A DNA stretch of 64,000 nucleotides, from contig NC_043006.1 in the NCBI RefSeq assembly GCF_006345805.1, positions 11,408,001 through 11,472,000 of the forward strand. The letters are read 5' to 3'. Below the pieces are notes generated by a model. It saw only the letters and a list, made by a program, of their open reading frames with translations. It ran no database searches and was not told the origin of the DNA. The position numbers and the translations under genes were made by a program. This document shows, piece by piece, positions 1 to 53,730 of this stretch; position 1 is the first letter of the stretch; every line of letters begins with the position of its first letter. This DNA comes from Octopus sinensis (lineage: Eukaryota).

Positions 1-187
1 AAGGACAGAAAAATGGATTAAGTCGATTACAACGACCCCAGTGTGTAACTGGTACTTAATTTATCGACCCCCGAAAGGATGAAAGGCAAAGTCGACCTCG
101 GCGGAATTTGAACTCAGAACGTAGCGGCAGACGAAATAGGGCTACGCATTTCGCCCGGCGTGCTAACGTTTCTGCCAGCTCGCTGCC
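1..187 (-). mobile_element. tRNA-derived SINE family A (runs off the window start)
   Basis: Head GAGCTGGCAGAAxCGTTAGC and B box GAGTTCAAATTCC. Other copies at about 22770-23175(-), 28007-28594(-), 33067-33298(+), 44625-44770(+), 47390-47560(+), 47610-47840(-), 52930-53065(-), 55132-55705(+). Confidence 0.85.
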
Positions 188-439
188 TTTTATATATATA
201 TGAGTGTGTGTGTGTTAACAAATATAAAACCCTGCTGCCAAATACTTATCTTGTAGATGTTTTTCCAGAAATTTAACATCTGCGATTTCATGTTGTTTGA
301 AACCAAACCTTTGCTTATGATTCCTCTCAATTTTTATCATTTATTGATTGTTTTCTATTTGTAACTTTTTAAAAAAAAGTTGGTAGTTTTTAGTTTTAAA
401 TATACTTTATCATTTAATTTCATGTTTTTTATAATTTTT

Positions 440-461
440 TATTATTTTCATTTTTAACCAG
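440..461 (+). promoter_or_regulatory. Splice acceptor 10 nt upstream of the ATG; the 5' UTR exon and promoter probably lie upstream of the window
   Basis: T-rich tract followed by CCAG (AG at 460-461), then ttaaaagaaaATG. Confidence 0.6.
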
Positions 462-471
462 TTAAAAGAAA

Positions 472-1532
472 ATGGAACAGGATAACACCAAAGAAAATGA
501 TCTGCCGCTGATGGCGAACATAGACACATATTGTGTCCAGCATTATATTCTGGATTTGATGTGTGACTTTTCTAAAAACATACTTTCTGGATCAACGACA
601 CTCTTTGTTAATCGTGTTAAATCAGATCCAGTGAAATCTCATTTAGAAAATTACATTTTACCAATAAAAAAGCGGAAACAGGTAACTACAGACCAAATTA
701 TTACAGAGAAGAAACAGAAGAATTGCAGCAAAGTTTTAAAATGTTCTGAAAGCAATTCAAATAAACTTACAGATTCTTTAAACTCTGATAATGTGTTTTT
801 TGATGAAGAACATTCTAGTTTTGCTCAGTCTGAGCAATATTTAAAAGACTGCGAGGAAACTGAGTCAAGTTTTGCAACGCATGATATTCCAAGCAATAAT
901 GAGAAAACGCCATATATTCCAAAATTGGGTACTGTTGGATCTACACAAATTAATTCTTCGTGTTCAGAAGAGGAAATTTTACCAACAGATATTACTTCAA
1001 ATGATAAAAACGTCGAAGAAATAATTCCATCAATTGGCAATCAAAGAAATTTTATGACTGCAAAGGATATAAGTAAAGAATCTACGGAGTCAATGAATTC
1101 TTTTACAATTTGTCATTCAGAACAGAAACAATTTACCAAAGTTTTACCTGGCAATTCAGACATTAACCTTCAGTCAGTGGAAGGTGGCAGTAACCAATAT
1201 AACCATTCCATATTTATACTCGATGCCTGCGATATTATTGTTTCTGAAGTTACTTTATTACCACTTCTTTGGTGCGATAAATGCCAAAATAAATGTTTTA
1301 AAGAATGTGAAACAGGTGCTGATTCCTCTGCCAAAAGAGAAGAATTTTATCGTCAATGTTCTTTAAAAATTGGTAAAGAAATGTCATTTAAAAATGACAA
1401 ATGGTCACTGAGAATTTTTGAGAAGGATCCAACAGAAGAATTCTGCCTAAATTCCAAGTTTGCTATTAAAATTAAATATTCAACACTTGCCAAAGGGAAG
1501 TCATTGAAATGGGTACCAGACCAAGATGGGAA
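472..1532 (+). CDS. AOPEP: AOPEP coding exon 1 (N-terminal domain with long low-complexity insertion)
   Basis: Starts [33 protein letters not shown]; ends WVPDQDG with donor AA|GTAAGT at 1533 (phase 2). Confidence 0.93.
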
Positions 1533-1852
1533 GTAAGTTTTAATTCTTTGAGATTTTCTTGAAACATTTATACATACATATATATAACTTAAAATAGAAG
1601 ATCTGAAATCCACCTGATGAATGTCCTGAGAAGAGACATGAAACAATTGTAGTGGCGAATATAATTTTATTTAATTTATATTAAAATGGTTTTATGTATT
1701 GGATTAAGTCTTTCTTTGTTTGATTTGCAAAATAGTGGTTTTGTCTCTAATTAATATTATATAATATTTTACTATAAAATTGGATTCAATCCTAAATCTG
1801 ATTTTCCCTGTAAATTTGGATTTATTCCCTAATATTTATTATTATATATATA

Positions 1853-1894
<42 letters not shown>

Positions 1895-4800
1895 TTCTAT
1901 ATATATATATAATGCTAATTCACAGCCTTTTCTGTTTTTACTTACTTTATGTCATTTTTGTAAGCAAGTTTTATGGCTATTTACACTTATATTGGACATA
2001 TTACAGAGGCAATTCATATTAATTTCACCAACTGTATTGCTATCAGGTGGTATATAATTACCTCCGCCAAGGAAGGAGGTTATGTTTCCATCGGTGTTGG
2101 TTTGTCCGTCTGTATGCAACATAACTCAAAAAGTTGTGAACGGTATTTGATGAAACTTGCAGAAAAAGTTGGTAATGACATAAAGAACAGACGATCCGGG
2201 AATTTTTATGGATTCTTGAAGGATTTTTCATTTGTTATATTTACTTTACATGAATTTATGGATGAGAAGCTTGATGTCTTCATCTTGTTGAGGGATAAGA
2301 ATATCCTTCAGCAATACACATATGTGTAGTTTCTCCAGCATTGCAACTAACCCACTCAAGTGGTCAGGAGGTTAATGAGTACACACACACACACAAGGAT
2401 TTAAATGTGAGCTACTATAAGTTTCATGCTTCTGAACAATTTTTCAGGCTAAAAGATTGCCCAGTAGTACATGGTATTCTATACAAGCTTGCCCAACTAT
2501 TGTGCTATCAGGAGCATGCAGCTTATTGTAAACTCACATTTAAATCCTGTGTATATTAAATGATATCTCTTACTGGATGGAATACTTTTTTTGGTTGATT
2601 CTCACTGAAATGGAACAGTACACTGTATATACAAGTAACCAAGACCTTTGGTGATATCATCCTCATCATCATCATCGTTTAACGTCCGTTTTCCATGCTA
2701 GCATGGGTTGGATGGTTCGACCAGGGTCTGGGAAGCCAGGAGGCTGCACCAGGCTCCAGTCTGATCTGGCAGTGTTTCTACAGCTGGATGCCCTTCCTAA
2801 CGCCAACTACTCTGTGAGTCTAGTGGGTGCTTTTTACGTGCCACCAGCACAGGTGCCAGGATAGGCTGGCAACGGCCACAATCGGTTGGTGCTTTTTACG
2901 TGCCACTCAAGGCGGCACATACAGATGGTCACATGCAGATGGTGCTTTTTAGGTGCCAGTATAGGCTGGCAATGGCCATGATTGGTTGGTGCTTTTTACG
3001 TGCCACCGGTACGGAAGCCAGTCAAGGCGGCGCTGGCATCGGCCATATACAGATGGTGCTTTTTACATGCCAGCAGCACAGGTGCCAGGGGAGGCTGGCA
3101 ACGGCCATGATCGGTTGGTGCCTTTTACGTGCCATCGGCACGGAAGCCAGTCAAGGTGGTGCTGGCATGTGCTTGAGAAAACTTGTCAAGCCAAGTAAAG
3201 TCATGGCTAATGCCAGTGTCCTGTTGCTGGTGGGACATAAAAGCACCTGTACCAGTGGCATGTATAAAGCACCCATTATGCTTTCGGAGTGGTTGGCAGC
3301 TGTAGAAACCATGCCAAATCAGACTGGGATTTGGTGCAGCTCTCCAGCTTACCAGTTCCAGTCAAACTCTCTAGCCCATGCCAACATGGAAAGCTGACAC
3401 TAAAGGAAGATAATGATGATATATATACACACACAATAACAACAACAACAGGCTTCTTTCAGTTTCCACTTGTCAAATTCACTCACAAGGCTTTGGTTAT
3501 CCCAAAGTTATAGTAGAAGGCACTTGCCCAATGTGCCATGTAGTGGAACTGAACCCAAAACCCTGTGGCTGGCAAGCATACTATTCAACCATGCAGCCAT
3601 GCCTGTGCCTGGATACATTAATGTATTTTAAGATGTTAGTATTGTTATCATAAAGACAGTAATTTGTATTTATTGGTATTGATCTTATGAAATTATACAC
3701 TACTATCAAAGTCTCTATTACTAAGTTTTTCTTTTCTTTATATTTCCCAATCTTTTCAGTATGTGCATGTTTACTTGTGGACACTGGATAAACAATAGAT
3801 CCTTATTTCCGAGTCAGGATCATTCTGAAGCTCTGTCTACTTGGCAAGCCTATGTTACTGTTGAGAATATTCACACAGTCATCATGACAGGAGACAAAGA
3901 ACCTCTAATTACTAACACTGAAAATGGTAAGCATTTGAATTATATTTTGGAAAACACTACCTCCTCCTCAGGTTTGCTACAGCTGTTTCAGATGTGTTTT
4001 TTTATTGATGAACGAATCAATTACATCATGAAAGAAACTGTTTTCTTCAGGTGAATTAAAATGTTAGCTCAAGTCTGTATACGGATTAATATATGCATGA
4101 GTGTCCATATATACAGTCGCCGAGATAGATCATTAGCCACTACACACATTTTTTTCTCTCCTTGTTTCTCTCCTTGTTTTTTTCTGCGTCCCTTTCTGTA
4201 GAAGAGCGTAGGCTCGAAACGTAAAAGATTTTTTCAATTCCTGAGCGTTATACTAATACATCTGTTTGTTTTGTACACCACCTGTCTTCGTCTTTTGTTT
4301 TTTTTGTAAACTCTCCCTATACTGTTGATACATGCATATGTTATTCTCAGCCCTAAATTGGTCCTTATTATTAAAATGCCTTGATTCAATTATATCCTTC
4401 AGATAATTAATAGGTGCAGGCGTGGCTGTGTGGCAAGAAGTTTGCTTCCGAACCAGATGGTTCCAGGTTCACTCCCACTGTAGCCATACTGGAGCACCGC
4501 CTTGAGGGGTTTTAGTTGAACAAATTGGCCCCAGGACTTATTTTTTAAGCCTAGTACTTATTCTACCAGTCTCTTTTGCTGAACCACTAAGTTATGGTGA
4601 CTTAAACGTGCCAACATCGGTTTTCAAGTGGTGATGGAGGAGGGGACACAGACACACACACACACACACTCACACACACAGATATATACTTGTGGAGTTC
4701 TGTCCAGAATACAAGCTGTTTTTTCTCTTCAACATGGTAAACATATCTTACCATATTTTAATGGCTACCAAAATATATCATCATTATCATCATCTCTACA

Positions 4801-12098: not shown

Positions 12099-14594
12099 GT
12101 TTATGTGTGTATATTTGTTTGTGTGTCTGTGTTTGTTCCCCCACCATCGCCTGACAACCGATGCTGATGTGTTTACATCCCTGTAACTTAACATTTCGGC
12201 AAAAGAGACTGATAGAATAAGTACTAGGCTTACAAAGAATAAGTCCTGGGGTCGATTTGCTTGTCTAAAGGTGGTGCTCCAGCGTGGCCGCAGTCAAATG
12301 ACTGAAACAAGCTAAAAATAAAATATATATATATAGACTGAGATGTTTGGCGATATGAGGTCCTAGGGAAGATCCATCCATGAAACTGAGTGTTTGAGTT
12401 GTGTCCCACCCACATGTAGTAACACACTTTTTGCCCAATCTACCCTAAGAAATCAAACTACAACTCCTCTTTTGAATGCATCTTTCTCTTCCTCACATTT
12501 CCTCCTCATACATTATGATTGTTTTCCAGACCCCTTTCTTGCCCTTACTGCCGTGCTCACTGTATCACTGCTCCTCCACCCACCACTACCCACACCCACT
12601 CCCTATTTTTGTCTATGGTCAATGAATGTTATTTCCTATTTGTTTCTGTCTACAGATCACAGGAAATGACTACTATTCCCTTCAAACTCTGTTTTTATGA
12701 TCTGGACAGCAATGTCTTGAAACCAACCTGTTTTCCATTACATTTGAGACAGACTCAGCACTGAGTTGCTGAAGCAGAATTTTCTAGAACTTTCTATTCT
12801 GTTCAGTATCACAGATTTGCTGATCAGTTGCCTGACCTTGACCACTTGAGTATGCCCCTTAGTGGTTGACAACATGTTCATCCCTGATCATGAGCAGGAG
12901 TAGTGGGAGAGCATAGTCATGCGCCGAGAGGGATTCTTTGGGGTTTGGATAAATGTAACGAAAGCAAAGTTTGAAGGAAATATTAACCATTTTTCATACT
13001 TTCTAGGGGTAAGTAAATAGTTTTCATACTTTTTAGGGGTAAGCAAATAGTTTTCATACTTTCTAGGGGTAAGCAAACAGGAAATAACAGTCGCTACCCA
13101 AGGACAAAAATCATGTTACACAGAGTTATTTGTTGATGCACACTGGAGGTCTGCCAAACAGATAATAAATCATTAGATGCACACAAAACTGCAAGAATAT
13201 ACAAAGGATATATATCTATACTTGTGTTGTTTTGCATGCATGTTATAAATTATTATGTTTGATCCTTTCATTACTATATTCATTTTGAGATGCTTTGCGT
13301 TTCTTTCAATTATTTTCAATATAACAAAGAATTTAGTAAAATAACAAGCCTCAAATTGTGTAGGTCTTTACCTCAATGAGTCCAAGACTGAGTATGTAAA
13401 CAAGTACCTGTCCAACAGTGGTTTCATCATCCATACTCTCAACAATACGCTCTTAAATATGGTTTCTGATTACAAATATCTTGAGTGATACATATCATCG
13501 TCTGAAAAAGATTTTCTAACTAGAAAGGGTATGGCCTGGTCAGCCTGTAATGATATGCATAAGATCTGGTCATCAAATCTAAGTAGAGACTTCAAGCTTA
13601 AAATCTTCAAAGCCACAGTCGAACCAATTCTACTATATGGCTCAGAAACCTGGACGTTATCAAAGAAGCTTGAGAGGCGGTTGGATGGAACTTACACTTG
13701 CCTCTTTATGAGAGCTCAAAATCTCTCGTGGAAGCGTCATCCAACCAAAGTACAAATATATGGGAAATTACCACCTGTATCATCTCTTGTGAAAGGTAGA
13801 AGAGTCCAGTTTGCTGGACATTGTTGTTGAGCTGAAAACGAGGTAATTTCTACTCTTGTCCTCTGTAAGCCATCAGCTCGCAATACCAGAGGGCGCACAC
13901 TCTCCTACCCTGATGTAATCTCCAGGGATACAGGCATCGAGCAACAGGACCTCCGTAATGTTATGATGGACCGTGAAGTCTGGCATAACATAGTAAATTC
14001 CATTGTCTCGACCACGGTCGAACAATGATGATGATGAGTAAACTAACTAAGTTTTCATTAAGCTAGTGTTAGAAACATAAATTAGGACTAAGGTTTGGTG
14101 GAAGATTTTAATTCAAAACTTATGAAAACAAGACATTTGTACCACAGAGCCAGAGACAGTTTCAGCCGGGTTGATAACGAAAGGGGTAAAATGTATTCTT
14201 AAAAGTCTCTGGTTTTTATGCTATTTTTAAAATTGTTTCATAACCGTGGATATTTTTCAAACATATCTATTTTCTTTAGTTAGATGAACTATTTGAGTTA
14301 CGAGCCTTCTTGAAATATAAATTACTTTCTGCTGAACTGGAACATACTGATACGAGTCTGCAAATTATGAGGTTAGTAGCTTATTAATTTCTGATACTCT
14401 TTCTCTTTACTTGTTTCAGTCATTTGACTATGGCCATGCTGGAGCACCACCTTTAGTCGAGCAAATCGACCCCGGCACTTATTCTTTGTAAGCCCAGTAC
14501 TTATTCTATCGGTCTCTTTTGCCGAACCGCTAAGTGACGGGGACGTAAACACACCAGCATCGGTGGTCAAACAATGCCAGGGGGACAAACACAA

Positions 14595-14635
<41 letters not shown>

Positions 14636-15245
14636 CATATATACGACAGGCTTCTTTCAGTTTCCGTCTACCAAATCCACTCACAAGGCATTGGTCGGCC
14701 CGGGGCTATAGCAGAAGACACTTGCCCAAGATGCCACGCAGTGGGACTGAACCCGGAACCATGTGGTTGGTTAGCAAGCTACTTACCACACAGCCACTCC
14801 TGCGCCTGATGTTTTTTATTTCTTTAAATGTATGAAATGAACATTTCATTCCAAATCAGACTGGAGTCGGGTGTGGTCCCTCAGCTTGCCAGCCCTGGTC
14901 AAACCATCCAACCCATTCCAGCATGGACCAGGGACACTAAATGATGACGATGATGATGAATAAGCTCATGATGTTATGCATCTGTTCTTTTCCCTGCTTT
15001 GCCTTGCTGCCTACTTGGCAACCTCTCTGGTGTTGGTGCCACATAAAAAGCACTCAGTACACTCTGTCGAGTTGTTGGCATTTGGAAGGGCATCCAGCCA
15101 TGGAAACCATGCCAAAGCCGACGTCAGAGCTCAGCATGGCCCCACAGCTTGCTGGATCCTGTCAAACAGTTCATTACATGCCTACATGGCGAATGGACTT
15201 TAAATAATAATGACTTACTACTTCTACTACTACTACTACTACTAT

Positions 15246-15291
<46 letters not shown>

Positions 15292-18200
15292 ACTACTACT
15301 ACCACCACCACCACTACTACTTTTACTACTACAGCTGCTGCTGCTACTACTACTACTACTACTACTACTACTGCTGCTGCTACTATTACTACTACTTACT
15401 ACTACTACAGCTACTACCACCACTACTACTACTACTACAGCTGCTGCTGCTACTACTACTACTACTACTATACTACTACTACTACTACAACTGCTGCTAC
15501 TATTACTACTACTACTACTACAGCTACTGCTGCTGCTATTATTACTACTGCTGCTACTATTACTACTGCTACTACTTTTGCACCACTTGTTTTTGATACA
15601 TAAGAACTACAACTATAATATCCCCCATGCATTCTCAGAAGGTCTAAGGAATTAGAATGTGGGAGGCCCTTAAAGTTTAAAATAAAAAAAAACATTGGTA
15701 AACCTTAATGAGAAGAAAAAAGCTGAAGTCAAGAATGGTCAAAGATATATTGTGCTGGAAAAGAAATGGATATACCATTCGTCATCATTGTTTTGATGTC
15801 CACTTCTTCAGGCTTCCATAGATCAGATGGAATTCAGTGAGGAAGATTTGCGATGGTTGGATGATGTCCTTCCTGTTGTCAGCCCTCACTTGTTTCCAAA
15901 CAAGGTCATATTTCACCATCACTGGACAAACGAACAACAATGCCTGTATAACAGTGATACTGTATTTACATTATTTACAATCGACGGATATTTGTCCTCA
16001 TCTTGTTTGTTGTTAACACAACATTTCGGCTGATATACCCTCCAGCCTTCATCAGGTGTCTTGGGGGAAATTTCGAACCTGGCTTCTCATTCCTAAGGTA
16101 TTTGTTGTTGATGTTGCTGTTGCTGCTGCTGTTGTTGTTGTTGTTCGTAGTTTGGGGACACAGACACACAAACACACACGCATATATAAATATGCATATA
16201 TACGACAGGCTTCTTTCAGTTTCCGTCTACCAAGGCTTTGATCGGCCCGAGGCTATAGTAGAAGACACTTGCCCAAGGTGTTACACAGTGGGACTGAACC
16301 TAGAACCATGTGGTTGGTAAGCAAGCTACTTACCACACAGCTACTCATTGCTAAATTTGTTTTCACTTTGGAATAAACAATATGAAAGAATAATGTTCTG
16401 TTTCATTCCTGTAGATCCCAAGCTCATTCCTTCAGTGTGTCAACTATGGCTTCATTTTTTTTCTGCTACTGGGTTCACTATGAGTCAGATATCTCTATAT
16501 ATATAAACGGCAAAATGTCTGTGTGCGTGTCATCATCATCATCATCATCATCATCGTTTAACGTCCGCTTTCCATGCTAGCATGGGTTGGACGGTTCAAC
16601 TAGGGTCTGGGGAGTCCGAAGGCTGCACCAGGCCAGTCAGATCTGGCAGTGTTTCTACAGCTGGATGCCCTTCCTAACGCCAACCACTCCGAGAGTGTAG
16701 TGGGTGATTTTATGTCCCACCGACACAGGTGCCAGATGAGGCTGGCGAACGGCCACGCTTGGATGGTGTTTTTTTTATGTGCCACCAACACAGGTGCCAG
16801 ACGAGGCTGGCGAACAGCCACGATCGGATGGTGTTTGTTACGTGCCCACAGCACGGAGGCCAGTCGATGCGGTACTAGCTACGGCCACGTTCGGATGGTT
16901 TTCTTATGTGCCACCGGCACTGGTACCACAAAGATACAAATTCCATTGATGTTCATCTATTTTGATTTGGTTTGATTTTAGTTTGATTTTCACTTGCCTC
17001 CACAGGTCTTCACAAGTGTCACAAGAAGGAAGGTATGCACAGGTGGACTGACTACGTCCCAGGTAGGGACCACGGGTTATGGCCTCACTAGTCTTGCCGG
17101 GTCTTCTCACGCACAGCATACTTCCATAGGTCTCGGTCTCTAGTCATTTCCTTGGTGAGACCTAAAGTTCGAAGGTCGTGCTTCACCACCTCGTCCCAGG
17201 TTTTCCTGGGTCTACCTCTTCCACAGGTTCCCTCAACTGCTAGGGTGTAGCACTTTTGCACACAACTATCTTCAGCCATTCTCGTCACATGACCATACCA
17301 GTGCAGCCGTCTCTCTTGCACACCACAACTGATGCTTCTTAGGTTCAACTTTTCTCTCAAGGTACTTACACTCTGTCGATTATGAACACTGACATTACAC
17401 ATCCATCGGAGCATACTGGCTTCATTTCTTGCGAGCTTACGCATATCCTCAGCAGTCACGGCCCATGTTTCACTACCATGTAGCATGGCTGTACATACAT
17501 ATGCGTCATACAGTCTGCCTTTTACTCTGAGCGAGAGGCATCTTGTCACCAGCAGGGGTAAGACTTCTCTAAACTTTGCCCAGGCTATTCTTACTCTAGC
17601 CATTACACTTTCAGCACACCCACCCCAACTACTGACTTGGTCACCTAGGTAGCGGAAGCTATCAACTACTTCTAGTTTGTCTCCCTGGAACGTGGTAGAA
17701 GTTGGTCTCTGCACATTTCCAGTGTTTATTGCTCCTGAGCATCTGCCACAGACAAAAATTATTTTCCTAGTTAGCCTTCCTTTGACATTGCTGCACCTCT
17801 TATGTCCATAGCTTACACTTGGTGCACCTTATAGAGTTTCTACCTACACGTTTTTTACAGATCAAGCAGGGCCATCTACCTGAAGTCGTTTGTGATTGGT
17901 CCATACAAATCCCCAATTTTTCAGTTAGAGGGCTTGCACTTTCTATGGTCATTCAAAACCATCCAAGGGTGGTCGTGCACATCTTTACATTCCCCCAGTC
18001 ACCCCACAAAGCCATTAAAAAAATCAATAGAAGTGACTTTTTTGTGAATTTTCTATCCAAAACCCAATCAAAATGCCCGAAACTTGATACGCTAATTGTG
18101 TGCACGCATGCAGCTGTATATGCACTATGACCCAGCAACTAATAAGATGCTAGGATCAGTTCTATTAACTATAATCCTTCATTACTTGTATCATCTGTGG

Positions 18201-52440: not shown

Positions 52441-53174
52441 TGTAAGAATGCGTGTGAGAGGAGTGTGATCAAGTGGAGGTATGAAGGCTATGAAGCCCAT
52501 TCCTACCTTCATACACACCTGTGTCGGCCTCCATGCACTGATGCTTGCATAGGCACACTTACTCATATACAGTAAATAAAGAAAACGAGAGAGAGAGAGA
52601 GCAAGAAACAACTCCAGTGACAATGCCCAATATATATGTATTTTCTATCATGTAGTCAGCAGGGAAGAGCAGAGCCCATGGCCATTTTCAGGATCTCCGA
52701 GCTTGGTTAAGAAACTTCCACTGAATGTTTGCAACAGACAGTACTTCACTAATGGCACTCGAGGTCCACATGGTGGTGTTAAACAGGTTGACGAGTTAAA
52801 TCTACCACATAAATATAAGCCACAGCAAGATTTGATCTGTGACTTTCAGCAATAAAGAGTTTGCAGAAATGTGTTTTTGAGTGTTTTCTTTCTTGTATTT
52901 GAAAAGGTGAATCTTTTCCGAAATATAGGTTTCAAATTTTGGTACAAGTCAAAAGGGATGAAAAGCAAAGTCTACTTCGGTGGAATTTGAATCCAGTATG
53001 TAGAGACAAATGAAATACTGCTAAGCATTTTGCCCGGTGTGCTAACGATTCTGTCTGCTCGCCACCTTAATCTTTTCTGAAATATCTGTGTAATGTAATG
53101 CAATATCTTTACTCTGTTTTCATTTATTGACACCACATGTATTCTGCCTAACTTCTCTCCAACATTGTTCTATG

Positions 53175-53419
53175 TTTAAGAAATGAGAATTATTTACATT
53201 TGACGGATATTTGTCCTCAACTTGTTTGTTGTTAACACAACGTATCGGCTGATATACTCTCCAGCCTTCATCAGGTGTCTTGGGGAAATTTCGAACTTGG
53301 GTTCTCATTCCTTCGATGTTATTATTATTATTATTGTTGTTGTTGTTACTGTTCAGGTCACTGCTTGGAATCGAACTCGGAATCTTAGGGTTAGTAGCCC
53401 GCGCTCTTAACCACTACGC
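53175..53419 (-). mobile_element. tRNA-headed SINE-like element carrying a hammerhead
   Basis: tRNA-like head with A box (AGTGGTTAAGAG) and B box (GAGTTCGATTC), then an (AAC/AAT)n linker, then a conserved body with the hammerhead. A headless copy lies at about 15960-16140 (-). Confidence 0.65.
53234..53279 (-). ncRNA. Hammerhead ribozyme, copy 2 (core mutated GAAA>GATA)
   Basis: GACAC-CTGATGA-A-GGCTG(GAGAGTATAT)CAGCC-GATA-CG-TT^-GTGTT. Confidence 0.55.
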
Positions 53420-53730
53420 GCACGGGCATATGGCGTAGTGGTTAAGAGCGCGGGCTACTAACCCCAAGATTCCGAGTTCGATTCTCTCCAACATTGTTCA
53501 GCTTTTTTTTTCTTTCAAACATAATAAATAAACCAAAGCAAGGAACAAAATAATTCAAAATAACAATAAAGAAACATATTTCTTTAAATCTAAGTATTTT
53601 TAATAATTCTTGTAATTGCTATACATGATGAAGTTTGTTCCACTTTGTCTCCAGTTCATAAAGAGTTGGCTTTAGAAAATCAGATCAGTAGTTAGGAATT
53701 TGTGTTCTTCTGCAAAATCTTTCCGTTTAT

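What the first reader, a model, noticed from the sequence alone, without database searches (positions are those of the whole stretch)
1610..1655. Canonical hammerhead ribozyme on the sense strand, 77 nt inside AOPEP intron 1
Seen: CCAC-CUGAUGA-AUGUC(9-nt loop)GACAU-GAAA-CAAUUG-UA^-GUGG. Every core nucleotide is present, all three helices pair, the cleavage triplet is GUA (cut after 1651) and helix III is a perfect palindrome (ACAAUUGU). Established: minimal type I hammerheads with palindromic helix III occur in Penelope-like elements and can cleave as dimers, and conserved intronic hammerheads exist in amniote genes. Inference: in the pre-mRNA just past the first coding donor it could cut the nascent transcript and affect splicing or output. 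Helix III is weak as a monomer, so activity is not assured.
Basis: partly seen in the sequence, partly recalled or inferred. Interest (0 to 1): 0.8.

Follow-up and report, generated by a model that had tools for sequence, protein, structure and literature searches.

The report
Hammerhead relic in young intronic insertion
A complete but minimal hammerhead-ribozyme motif really does sit in intron 1 of an octopus aminopeptidase O gene, but it came in on a roughly 245-base insertion that two other octopods lack, so it is most likely an ordinary, nearly inactive retroelement leftover and not a conserved gene regulator.

Summary
The motif is real. Window 1610-1655 (+) reads CCAC/CUGAUGA/AUGUC-9 nt-GACAU/GAAA/CAAUUG/UA^/GUGG, 77 nt into intron 1 of the aminopeptidase O (AOPEP) orthologue, on the sense strand. 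A motif this compact never appeared in 280 Mb of random sequence.

It is not conserved. The orthologous intron of Octopus bimaculoides (93% identical flanks) and of a more distant octopod (three individuals) runs straight through a (TA)n microsatellite. The window instead carries an extra, 25% GC segment (about 1587-1830) that holds the motif. So this is a lineage-specific insertion into (TA)n, a preferred target of Penelope-like elements (PLEs).

The architecture matches the PLE/retrozyme-type minimal type I hammerhead: short helix I, 2-bp helix III with a palindromic loop, and no recognisable tertiary contacts. Position 10.1-11.1 is A-U, not the conserved G-C. Predicted folding gives helix III about 3% probability as a monomer. 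Only a dimer forms the active double hammerhead, and there is only one copy here.

No second copy of the insert was found in the little octopus DNA available, so the retroelement origin is inferred, not shown. Rfam hammerhead models do not score the motif.

Verdict: new member of a known kind; a regulatory role is unlikely.

The parts
472..1532 (+). First coding exon of the aminopeptidase O (AOPEP) orthologue
   Evidence: 354-aa ORF. It is 88% identical to O. bimaculoides aminopeptidase O. tblastn of XP_052826880.1 gives 13 collinear exon matches on the + strand.
1533..3760 (+). Intron 1 (GTAAGT donor at 1533-1538; 3' end approximate, just before the exon 2 match that starts at 3761)
1563..1586 (.). 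TA-rich target sequence left of the insertion; possible left copy of a long target-site duplication (AACATTTATACATACATATATATA)
   Evidence: Three-way alignment with the empty sites. It is a 79% direct repeat of 1831-1854. The sequence is low-complexity, so the duplication is only suggestive.
1587..1830 (+). Lineage-specific inserted segment (about 245 bp, 25% GC) that carries the hammerhead; contains a 36-nt internal tandem duplication at 1767-1833
   Evidence: Absent from O. bimaculoides L002 and from L001/L003/L004. GC 0.254 against 0.38 for the intron. Internal repeat D4. No other copy in the window or in L002.
1610..1613 (+). Helix I, 5' strand (CCAC)
   Evidence: pair probability 0.54-0.94 in contexts of 131 nt or less
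1614..1620 (+). Core C3-U4-G5-A6-U7-G8-A9 (CUGAUGA)
1621..1639 (+). Helix II (AUGUC/GACAU, extendable by 2 bp past a bulge) with loop 2; the 10.1-11.1 pair is A-U
1640..1642 (+). Core G12-A13-A14
1643..1650 (+). Helix III segment ACAAUUGU: A15.1-U16.1 and C-G around AAUU as a monomer, or an 8-bp intermolecular helix in a dimer
   Evidence: Monomer pair probability about 0.03. The dimer MFE is the double hammerhead, -25.2 against 2 x -8.4 kcal/mol.
1651..1651 (+). H17 = A; predicted cleavage between 1651 and 1652 (GUA triplet)
   Evidence: follows from hammerhead numbering
1652..1655 (+). Helix I, 3' strand (GUGG)
1831..1897 (.). Right flank: possible right copy of the target-site duplication, followed by the expanded (TA)n microsatellite

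Best explanation
The motif is a genuine-looking minimal type I hammerhead of the kind carried by Penelope-like elements (PLEs) and their non-autonomous derivatives (animal non-LTR retrozymes and SINE-like elements). It arrived in this octopus lineage, after the split from O. bimaculoides, on an AT-rich fragment of about 245 bp. The fragment integrated into a (TA)n microsatellite 54 nt downstream of the AOPEP exon 1 donor, probably by retrotransposition with a long target-site duplication.

In the parent element such hammerheads work as dimers. Two neighbouring copies pair through the palindromic helix III and swap helix I strands, and each cuts the other to process multimeric element RNA. Here only one copy exists. 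As part of the AOPEP pre-mRNA it should form helices I and II at best, almost never helix III, and cleave negligibly. It is therefore a tolerated, probably neutral relic with no conserved role in AOPEP expression.

Shown:
- the motif itself
- its improbability by chance
- its position in the gene
- the empty site in two relatives
- the (TA)n target
- the predicted monomer and dimer folds

Inferred:
- the PLE/retrozyme origin
- the retrotransposition mechanism
- the lack of activity
For: - Motif and chance level.
- Gene, strand and intron position.
- Empty site, O. bimaculoides: window 191-1585 matches L002 4718-6105 at 93%, and window 1891-2002 matches L002 6090-6201, with a contiguous (TA)n there.
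- Empty site, second octopod: the same gap is seen in L001 and in two more individuals, L003 and L004, which are 98-99% identical to L001 with no indel.
- Polarity: L001 is 82-83% identical to both the window and L002. It is therefore the outgroup, and an insertion is the parsimonious reading.
- Insert composition: 25% GC against 38% for the intron.
- Possible 24-nt target-site duplication.
- Folding: helix III P about 0.03; the hammerhead helices are at or below 0.11 in the 228-nt context; the dimer MFE is exactly the double hammerhead, 8.4 kcal/mol better than two monomers.
- Literature on the architecture: metazoan PLE hammerheads have a 4-5 bp helix I, a long helix II and a palindromic minimal helix III. 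They are inactive as single motifs and poorly active even as dimers, and occur mostly as scattered single copies from truncated elements (PMC4209133; PMC6765202).
- Literature on targets and size: (TA)n is a preferred PLE target and hammerheads lie near PLE 3' ends (PMC8557442). Animal retrozyme units are 150-450 bp and low in GC (PMC7229834). Monomer copies are dispersed, and about 43% are intronic in Xenopus (preprint 10.64898/2026.07.22.740005).
- PLE activity in octopus: 31 putatively active PLE families are annotated in O. vulgaris (PMC13282606).
- Independent support in the same window: a second hammerhead-like motif sits in the tail of a SINE-like element. One copy of that element is a 312-bp insertion with a perfect 17-bp target-site duplication that O. 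bimaculoides lacks. So short hammerhead-bearing retroelements were mobile in this lineage.
Against: - No second copy of the insert was found in the window, in 44 kb of O. bimaculoides, in the Logan contigs, or by a six-frame pseudo-protein search of the protein collection. Only about 110 kb of octopus DNA could be searched, so this is weak.
- No reverse transcriptase or GIY-YIG ORF lies nearby.
- The insert RNA is no more stable than shuffled sequence (z = 0.17), unlike what a compact retrozyme circle might be expected to show.
- The motif lacks two hallmarks listed for PLE min-hammerheads: the extra nucleotide between A9 and 10.1, and the G10.1-C11.1 pair.
- Rfam hammerhead models give no hit. 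They also barely register a complete hammerhead-like motif in a metagenome contig (14.9 bits), so that negative counts for little.
- The proposed target-site duplication is low-complexity.
- Activity was not measured.
Confidence: 0.68

Rival explanations
1. It is a recently acquired but functional intronic ribozyme. The hammerhead cuts the nascent AOPEP pre-mRNA 119 nt past the exon 1 donor, either as a monomer helped by host factors or by pairing between transcripts, and so lowers or tunes AOPEP output in this species.
For: The core is complete, it is on the sense strand, and the GUA site is cleavable. Helices I and II are predicted to form in short contexts. Conserved intronic hammerheads exist in amniotes (cited in PMC7229834 and PMC6765202).
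Against: - The motif is absent from the orthologous intron of two other octopods.
- Because the insertion is young (flanks are 7% diverged from O. bimaculoides), an intact 46-nt motif needs no selection to explain it.
- Helix III probability is about 0.03, and the core is mispaired in the monomer MFE.
- The 10.1-11.1 pair is A-U.
- No tertiary contact is recognisable.
- Single PLE-type motifs showed no detectable cleavage in vitro (PMC4209133).
- Retrozyme copies are depleted from introns in Xenopus, which suggests they are tolerated at best.
Confidence: 0.04
2. It is a chance hammerhead look-alike. The inserted AT-rich DNA is not derived from a hammerhead-bearing element (for example filler DNA or an unrelated repeat), and the motif arose by coincidence.
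For: No other copy of the insert or motif family was found. Rfam models do not recognise it. It lacks the G10.1-C11.1 pair and the extra nucleotide after A9. A genome of a few Gb is expected to hold some chance matches; my analytic estimate is about 14 compact matches per 2.7 Gb.
Against: - The expected number of compact matches per 64 kb is below about 1e-3, and about 1e-5 for a given 245-bp insert.
- The 8-nt palindrome at helix III is an extra feature that the descriptor does not require.
- The motif lies in a lineage-specific insertion in (TA)n, which fits the target preference of PLEs.
- The same window holds another hammerhead-bearing retroelement family.
Confidence: 0.15
3. It is an intronic box C/D snoRNA or another small RNA gene, not a ribozyme motif.
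For: UGAUGA (C-box-like) at 1615-1620 and CUGA at 1626-1629. Weak Rfam matches: snoR21 at 21.8 bits, E 0.95, and SNORD111 on the minus strand at 15.9 bits.
Against: Both scores are far below the gathering thresholds of 45 and 46. There is no D box near a 3' terminal stem in the alignment. The sequence is not conserved in the orthologous introns. It lies next to the 5' splice site, not upstream of the branch point.
Confidence: 0.01

Closest known systems
Minimal/small type I hammerheads of Penelope-like elements (Cervera & de la Pena 2014, PMC4209133; Lunse, Weinberg & Breaker 2017, cited in PMC6765202)
   Same: - Type I topology
- 4-bp helix I
- helix II longer than the canonical 4 bp (5 bp, 7 with a bulge)
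- 2-bp helix III with a palindromic loop, so that two copies form a double hammerhead
- found as a scattered single copy
- inserted into (TA)n
   Different: - No extra nucleotide between A9 and 10.1
- A-U, not G-C, at 10.1-11.1
- no PLE ORF or terminal repeat identified around it
- no family members found in the small amount of octopus DNA available
Animal non-LTR retrozymes (Cervera & de la Pena 2020, PMC7229834; Li, Clavereau & Pollet 2026 preprint)
   Same: A low-GC unit of a few hundred bp carrying one type I hammerhead. Dispersed monomer copies exist, many of them in introns. When target-site duplications are present, they are longer than the 4 bp seen in plant LTR retrozymes.
   Different: Not in a tandem array. 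The insert RNA shows no unusual structure (z = 0.17). No circular RNA evidence is available.
Newt satellite 2 and Schistosoma Sm-alpha hammerheads
   Same: Short helix III that requires dimerisation (newt). A hammerhead carried by a SINE-like non-autonomous element (Sm-alpha), as is also seen for the second motif family in this window.
   Different: Those are high-copy families with proven cleavage. Here there is one copy and no assay.
Conserved intronic hammerheads of amniotes (HH9, HH10; de la Pena & Garcia-Robles 2010)
   Same: On the sense strand, inside an intron of a protein-coding gene.
   Different: Those are ultraconserved across orthologous introns, have a stable helix III and tertiary contacts, and are detected by their own Rfam models. 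This one is lineage-specific, minimal and not detected.

Membership tests
Hammerhead ribozyme (motif definition) | Conserved core C3 U4 G5 A6 N7 G8 A9 / G12 A13 A14 / A15.1-U16.1 / H17 | tested here: met
   All present at 1614-1620, 1640-1643, 1650 and 1651.
Hammerhead ribozyme (motif definition) | Three helices radiating from the core | tested here: met
   Helix I is 4 bp, helix II 5 (+2) bp and helix III 2 bp. Helix III has only about 0.03 pair probability as a monomer.
Hammerhead ribozyme (motif definition) | Highly conserved G10.1-C11.1 pair | tested here: not met
   A1621-U1639 occupies 10.1-11.1. The conservation is stated in PMC4209133.
Hammerhead ribozyme (motif definition) | Tertiary contact between helix I and loop 2 | tested here: inconclusive
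   No loop 1 or internal loop is recognisable. A possible AU-rich extension of helix I (1604-1609 with 1664-1669) was seen by eye only.
Hammerhead ribozyme (motif definition) | Site-specific self-cleavage | not testable with these tools
   Needs in vitro transcription or end mapping.
Rfam hammerhead families (RF00163, RF00008, RF02275-RF02277) | Covariance-model score at or above the gathering threshold | tested here: not met
   No hammerhead hit at gathering, or at E<=10 in 261-nt and 66-nt searches. A complete hammerhead-like motif in L009 scored only 14.9 bits, so the models are narrow.
PLE-associated minimal type I hammerhead | Short helix I, long helix II, minimal palindromic helix III that allows a double hammerhead | tested here: met
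   The dimer MFE is the double hammerhead.
PLE-associated minimal type I hammerhead | Unpaired nucleotide between A9 and 10.1 | tested here: not met
   A1621 pairs with U1639. The second motif, at 16015-16060, does have this nucleotide.
PLE-associated minimal type I hammerhead | Lies in a PLE terminal repeat, or in a truncated copy of a multi-copy family | tested here: inconclusive
   No RT or GIY-YIG ORF nearby. No other copy in about 110 kb of octopus DNA or in the protein-collection search. The genome of the species itself is not available here.
PLE-associated minimal type I hammerhead | Insertion bias for microsatellites, (TA)n in several clades | tested here: met
   The empty sites in L002 and L001 are a continuous (TA)n run, and the insert splits it. 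The bias is described in PMC8557442.
Animal non-LTR retrozyme | Tandem repeats of 150-450 bp units, each with a type I hammerhead | tested here: not met
   Single unit, and no second copy in the window. The size (about 245 bp) and 25% GC fit a monomer.
Conserved intronic hammerhead (HH9/HH10 kind) | Conservation in orthologous introns | tested here: not met
   Absent in O. bimaculoides and in a second octopod.
Box C/D snoRNA | C and D boxes brought together by a terminal stem; model score | tested here: not met
   snoR21 scored 21.8 bits against a gathering score of 45, with no D box in the alignment.

The most novel reading that the evidence does not exclude
The hammerhead was co-opted within the last few million years. 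Helped by host factors or by pairing between nascent transcripts, it cleaves AOPEP pre-mRNA just downstream of exon 1 and gives this octopus lineage a species-specific, ribozyme-based brake on aminopeptidase O expression.
Probability: 0.03. Interest if true: 0.7.

Novelty: new member of a known kind. Interest (0 to 1): 0.2.

Why it matters
As it stands this is an ordinary case: one more scattered copy of the minimal hammerheads that litter invertebrate genomes.

It has modest value in three ways:
- I found no paper describing hammerhead motifs in cephalopods. This window shows at least two different hammerhead-bearing short insertions that arose after the split from O. bimaculoides, so the class seems recently mobile in octopus.
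- The locus is a natural example of a sense-strand ribozyme motif tolerated 119 nt from a splice donor. That is informative about how weak such motifs must be to escape selection.
- It is a useful caution for motif scans. A perfect core plus three helices does not imply a conserved or regulatory ribozyme, and one orthologous-intron comparison settles the question.

Tried and rejected
- **Rfam, whole window at gathering and three local E-value searches:** no hammerhead family was hit. The weight is low, because a complete hammerhead-like motif in metagenome contig L009 scored only 14.9 bits against Hammerhead_3.
- **snoRNA reading:** rejected.
- **Other copies of the insert:** blastn with word size 7 against the window, L002 and the Logan contigs found only TA-microsatellite noise.
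- **Metagenome contigs:** an exact-pattern scan with the helix II-specific pattern gave 6 hits, near the number expected by chance. None was an octopus-like family member.
- **Viral contigs:** scans for both motifs gave 0 hits.
- **Six-frame 'pseudo-protein' of the insert against the 5.8-billion protein collection:** none of 1097 candidates scored E<=10.
- **More octopod AOPEP loci:** the third protein search, with the conserved C-terminal 481 aa, confirmed the gene as aminopeptidase O. It returned no octopus other than O. bimaculoides.
- **Cuttlefish orthologue (P0014):** not on record for DNA retrieval.
- **UniProt model P0001:** not on record for DNA retrieval.
- **PLE protein near either motif:** no long RT ORF in the window, and Pfam hits were only PHD or zinc-finger fragments.
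- **Papers:** supplementary files of the two key PLE papers are not held. Lunse et al. 2017 is not held.
- **Fold of the whole insert:** no more stable than shuffles.
- **ARAGORN:** no tRNA in either insertion.

Full report
**Observation.** The window reads ccacCTGATGAatgtcctgagaagagacatGAAAcaattgTAgtgg at 1610-1655 on the + strand.
- In hammerhead numbering this gives helix I CCAC/GUGG (1610-1613 with 1652-1655) and the core C3-A9 CUGAUGA (1614-1620).
- Helix II is AUGUC/GACAU (1621-1625 with 1635-1639), closed by 9 nt. The MFE fold adds two more pairs past a bulge.
- Then come G12-A13-A14 (1640-1642), A15.1-U16.1 (1643/1650) and C15.2-G16.2 (1644/1649) around AAUU, and H17 = A1651.

**Chance level.** A descriptor search of both strands finds this as the only strict hammerhead in the window.
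- The loose descriptor occurs 7 times in 20 Mb of Markov-1 sequence searched on both strands, or 0.022 per 64 kb.
- A descriptor as compact as the real motif occurred 0 times in 280 Mb of composition-matched sequence.
- This agrees with my analytic estimate of about 2.6e-9 per position and strand.

**Gene context.** The 354-aa ORF at 472-1536 is 88% identical to an O. bimaculoides protein. The full-length member of that protein's cluster is annotated aminopeptidase O, XP_052826880.1.
- tblastn of that protein gives 13 collinear exon matches on the + strand between 472 and 49798.
- A search with the conserved C-terminal part returns aminopeptidase O / C9ORF3 from many animals.
- Exon 1 ends at 1532 and GTAAGT follows, so the motif starts 77 nt into intron 1 on the sense strand.

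**Orthologous introns.**
- I retrieved the O. bimaculoides locus (L002, CM046609.1:64326058-64370219).
- I also retrieved three short genomic contigs from a more distant octopod (L001, L003 and L004 from Logan runs SRR11869390, SRR11869385 and SRR11869394).
- Window 191-1585 aligns to L002 4718-6105 at 93%. Alignment resumes at window 1891 against L002 6090.
- In the three-way alignment both relatives run straight from the conserved start of the intron through a (TA)n run into ...TATAATRCTAATTCAC. The window has about 300 extra bases there.
- L003 and L004 are 98-99% identical to L001 over their whole length, without an indel.
- L001 is 82-83% identical to both the window and L002, while those two are 93% identical to each other. 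L001 is therefore the outgroup, and one insertion in the window's lineage explains the pattern better than two identical deletions.

**The insert.**
- The body (about 1587-1830) has 25% GC, against 38% for the intron.
- It splits the microsatellite.
- It may be flanked by a long duplication, 1563-1586 against 1831-1854 at 79% identity. That sequence is low-complexity, so I treat the duplication as suggestive only.

**What kind of hammerhead it is.** Cervera and de la Pena described 'min' hammerheads of metazoan Penelope-like elements (PLEs) with a 4-5 bp helix I, a long helix II and a minimal palindromic helix III.
- These motifs were not active as single copies and only weakly active as dimers. 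They were mostly found as scattered single copies attributed to truncated elements (PMC4209133; summarised with Lunse et al. 2017 in PMC6765202).
- PLEs prefer microsatellite targets, (TA)n in several clades, and carry the hammerhead near the 3' end (PMC8557442).
- Animal non-LTR retrozymes are low-GC units of 150-450 bp with one type I hammerhead (PMC7229834).
- A 2026 preprint argues that retrozymes are non-autonomous PLE derivatives. It reports dispersed monomers, about 43% of them intronic in Xenopus, although depleted relative to intergenic DNA.
- PLEs, including 31 putatively active families, are annotated in O. vulgaris (PMC13282606).
- The motif here fits this class in topology, helix lengths, the palindrome, the (TA)n target, and unit size and composition.
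- It departs in two listed hallmarks: there is no extra nucleotide between A9 and 10.1, and 10.1-11.1 is A-U where G-C is expected.

**Predicted behaviour.**
- In isolation or in contexts up to 131 nt, helix II forms with probability above 0.9 and helix I with 0.54-0.94, but helix III has only about 0.03.
- The monomer MFE mispairs part of the core.
- In a 228-nt stretch of the pre-mRNA all hammerhead pairs fall to 0.11 or less.
- Two copies together fold, as the MFE, into exactly the double hammerhead: an intermolecular 8-bp helix III and swapped helix I strands. That fold is -25.2 kcal/mol against -16.8 for two monomers.
- The RNA is thus built to work in pairs, as in tandem element transcripts.
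- A single intronic copy has no partner in cis, and pairing between nascent AOPEP transcripts is unlikely. I therefore expect negligible cleavage. This is inference and was not measured.

**Limits of the family assignment.** I could not find another copy of the insert.
- Searches of the window, L002 and the Logan contigs gave nothing.
- Pattern scans of metagenome and viral contigs gave nothing relevant.
- A six-frame pseudo-protein search of the protein collection also gave nothing.
- The species of the window is not in the collections. Its exon 1 product is not on record, and no octopus AOPEP other than that of O. bimaculoides was returned. Only about 110 kb of octopus DNA was searchable.
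- No RT or GIY-YIG ORF lies nearby.
- The insert RNA is not unusually structured.
- Rfam hammerhead models do not score the motif. They also barely score a complete hammerhead-like motif found in a metagenome contig, so that negative has little weight.
- The PLE/retrozyme origin is therefore the best-supported inference, not a demonstrated fact.

**Supporting context from the same window.** A relaxed descriptor found a second motif at 16015-16060 on the minus strand: GACAC/CUGAUGA/A/GGCUGG-8 nt-UCAGCC/GAAA/UG/UU^/GUGUU.
- It has the extra nucleotide after A9, a G10.1-C11.1 pair, a 6-bp helix II and no loop 3.
- Motifs this good are expected 0.0008 times per window.
- It belongs to a repeat with a second copy at 53189-53353, 85.5% identical, in which the core is broken (GAUA).
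- That second copy is the tail of a 312-bp insertion (53171-53482). The insertion is flanked by a perfect 17-bp target-site duplication and is absent from O. bimaculoides.
- Short hammerhead-bearing non-autonomous retroelements were therefore mobile in this lineage after the split from O. bimaculoides. This raises the prior that the insert at 1587-1830 is of the same general kind.

**Verdict.**
Its structural comparison to PLE hammerheads is apt.
- The functional inference is not supported. The motif is a lineage-specific passenger of an insertion, not a conserved intronic ribozyme, and it is predicted to be essentially inactive as a single copy.
- It is a new member of a known kind, of low interest.
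- The interesting reading, a recently co-opted brake on AOPEP, remains possible at a few per cent. It can be tested with a cleavage assay and end mapping.

Noticed in passing
window 16015-16060 (minus strand): Second hammerhead-like motif, antisense to AOPEP in a downstream intron: GACAC/CUGAUGA/A/GGCUGG-8 nt-UCAGCC/GAAA/UG/UU^/GUGUU. It shows PLE 'min-hammerhead' hallmarks: an extra nucleotide after A9, a G10.1-C11.1 pair, a 6-bp helix II and no loop 3. Expected by chance about 0.0008 times per window. Rfam does not score it.
   Followed up: partly
window 53171-53482 (element read on the minus strand); target-site duplication at 53154-53170 and 53483-53499: 312-bp insertion absent from O. bimaculoides, with a perfect 17-bp target-site duplication TCTCTCCAACATTGTTC. 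It consists of a hairpin-forming head with tRNA-like boxes (by eye only; ARAGORN calls none, and Rfam gives only a weak mir-885-like hairpin hit), then (AAC)n(AAT)n, then a tail of about 165 nt that is 85.5% identical to 15970-16133. The tail carries the second hammerhead-like motif with a broken core (GAUA). This is a SINE-like element with a hammerhead tail, possibly PLE-mobilised.
   Followed up: partly
L009 979-1036 (metagenome contig JACCDW010055480.1): Complete hammerhead-like motif with the same helix II stem (AUGUC/GACAU) as the finding, but a 6-bp helix I and a stable 5-bp helix III. It turned up in the pattern scan, its context is unknown, and Rfam gives only 14.9 bits to Hammerhead_3.
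   Followed up: partly
window 14394-14806 and 2648-3167: Further segments present in the window but not at the orthologous place in O. bimaculoides. They belong to SINE-like repeats with many copies in both loci, so intron content has turned over a good deal since the two species split.
   Followed up: no
window 1-190: The window starts inside a repeat that also occurs several times in the O. bimaculoides locus (78-83% identity), just upstream of the AOPEP first exon.
   Followed up: no
window 15127-15606: Long trinucleotide-type low-complexity tract, open in several frames (Ser/Asn-, Tyr- or Thr-rich translations), in the intron next to the second hammerhead-like motif.
   Followed up: no
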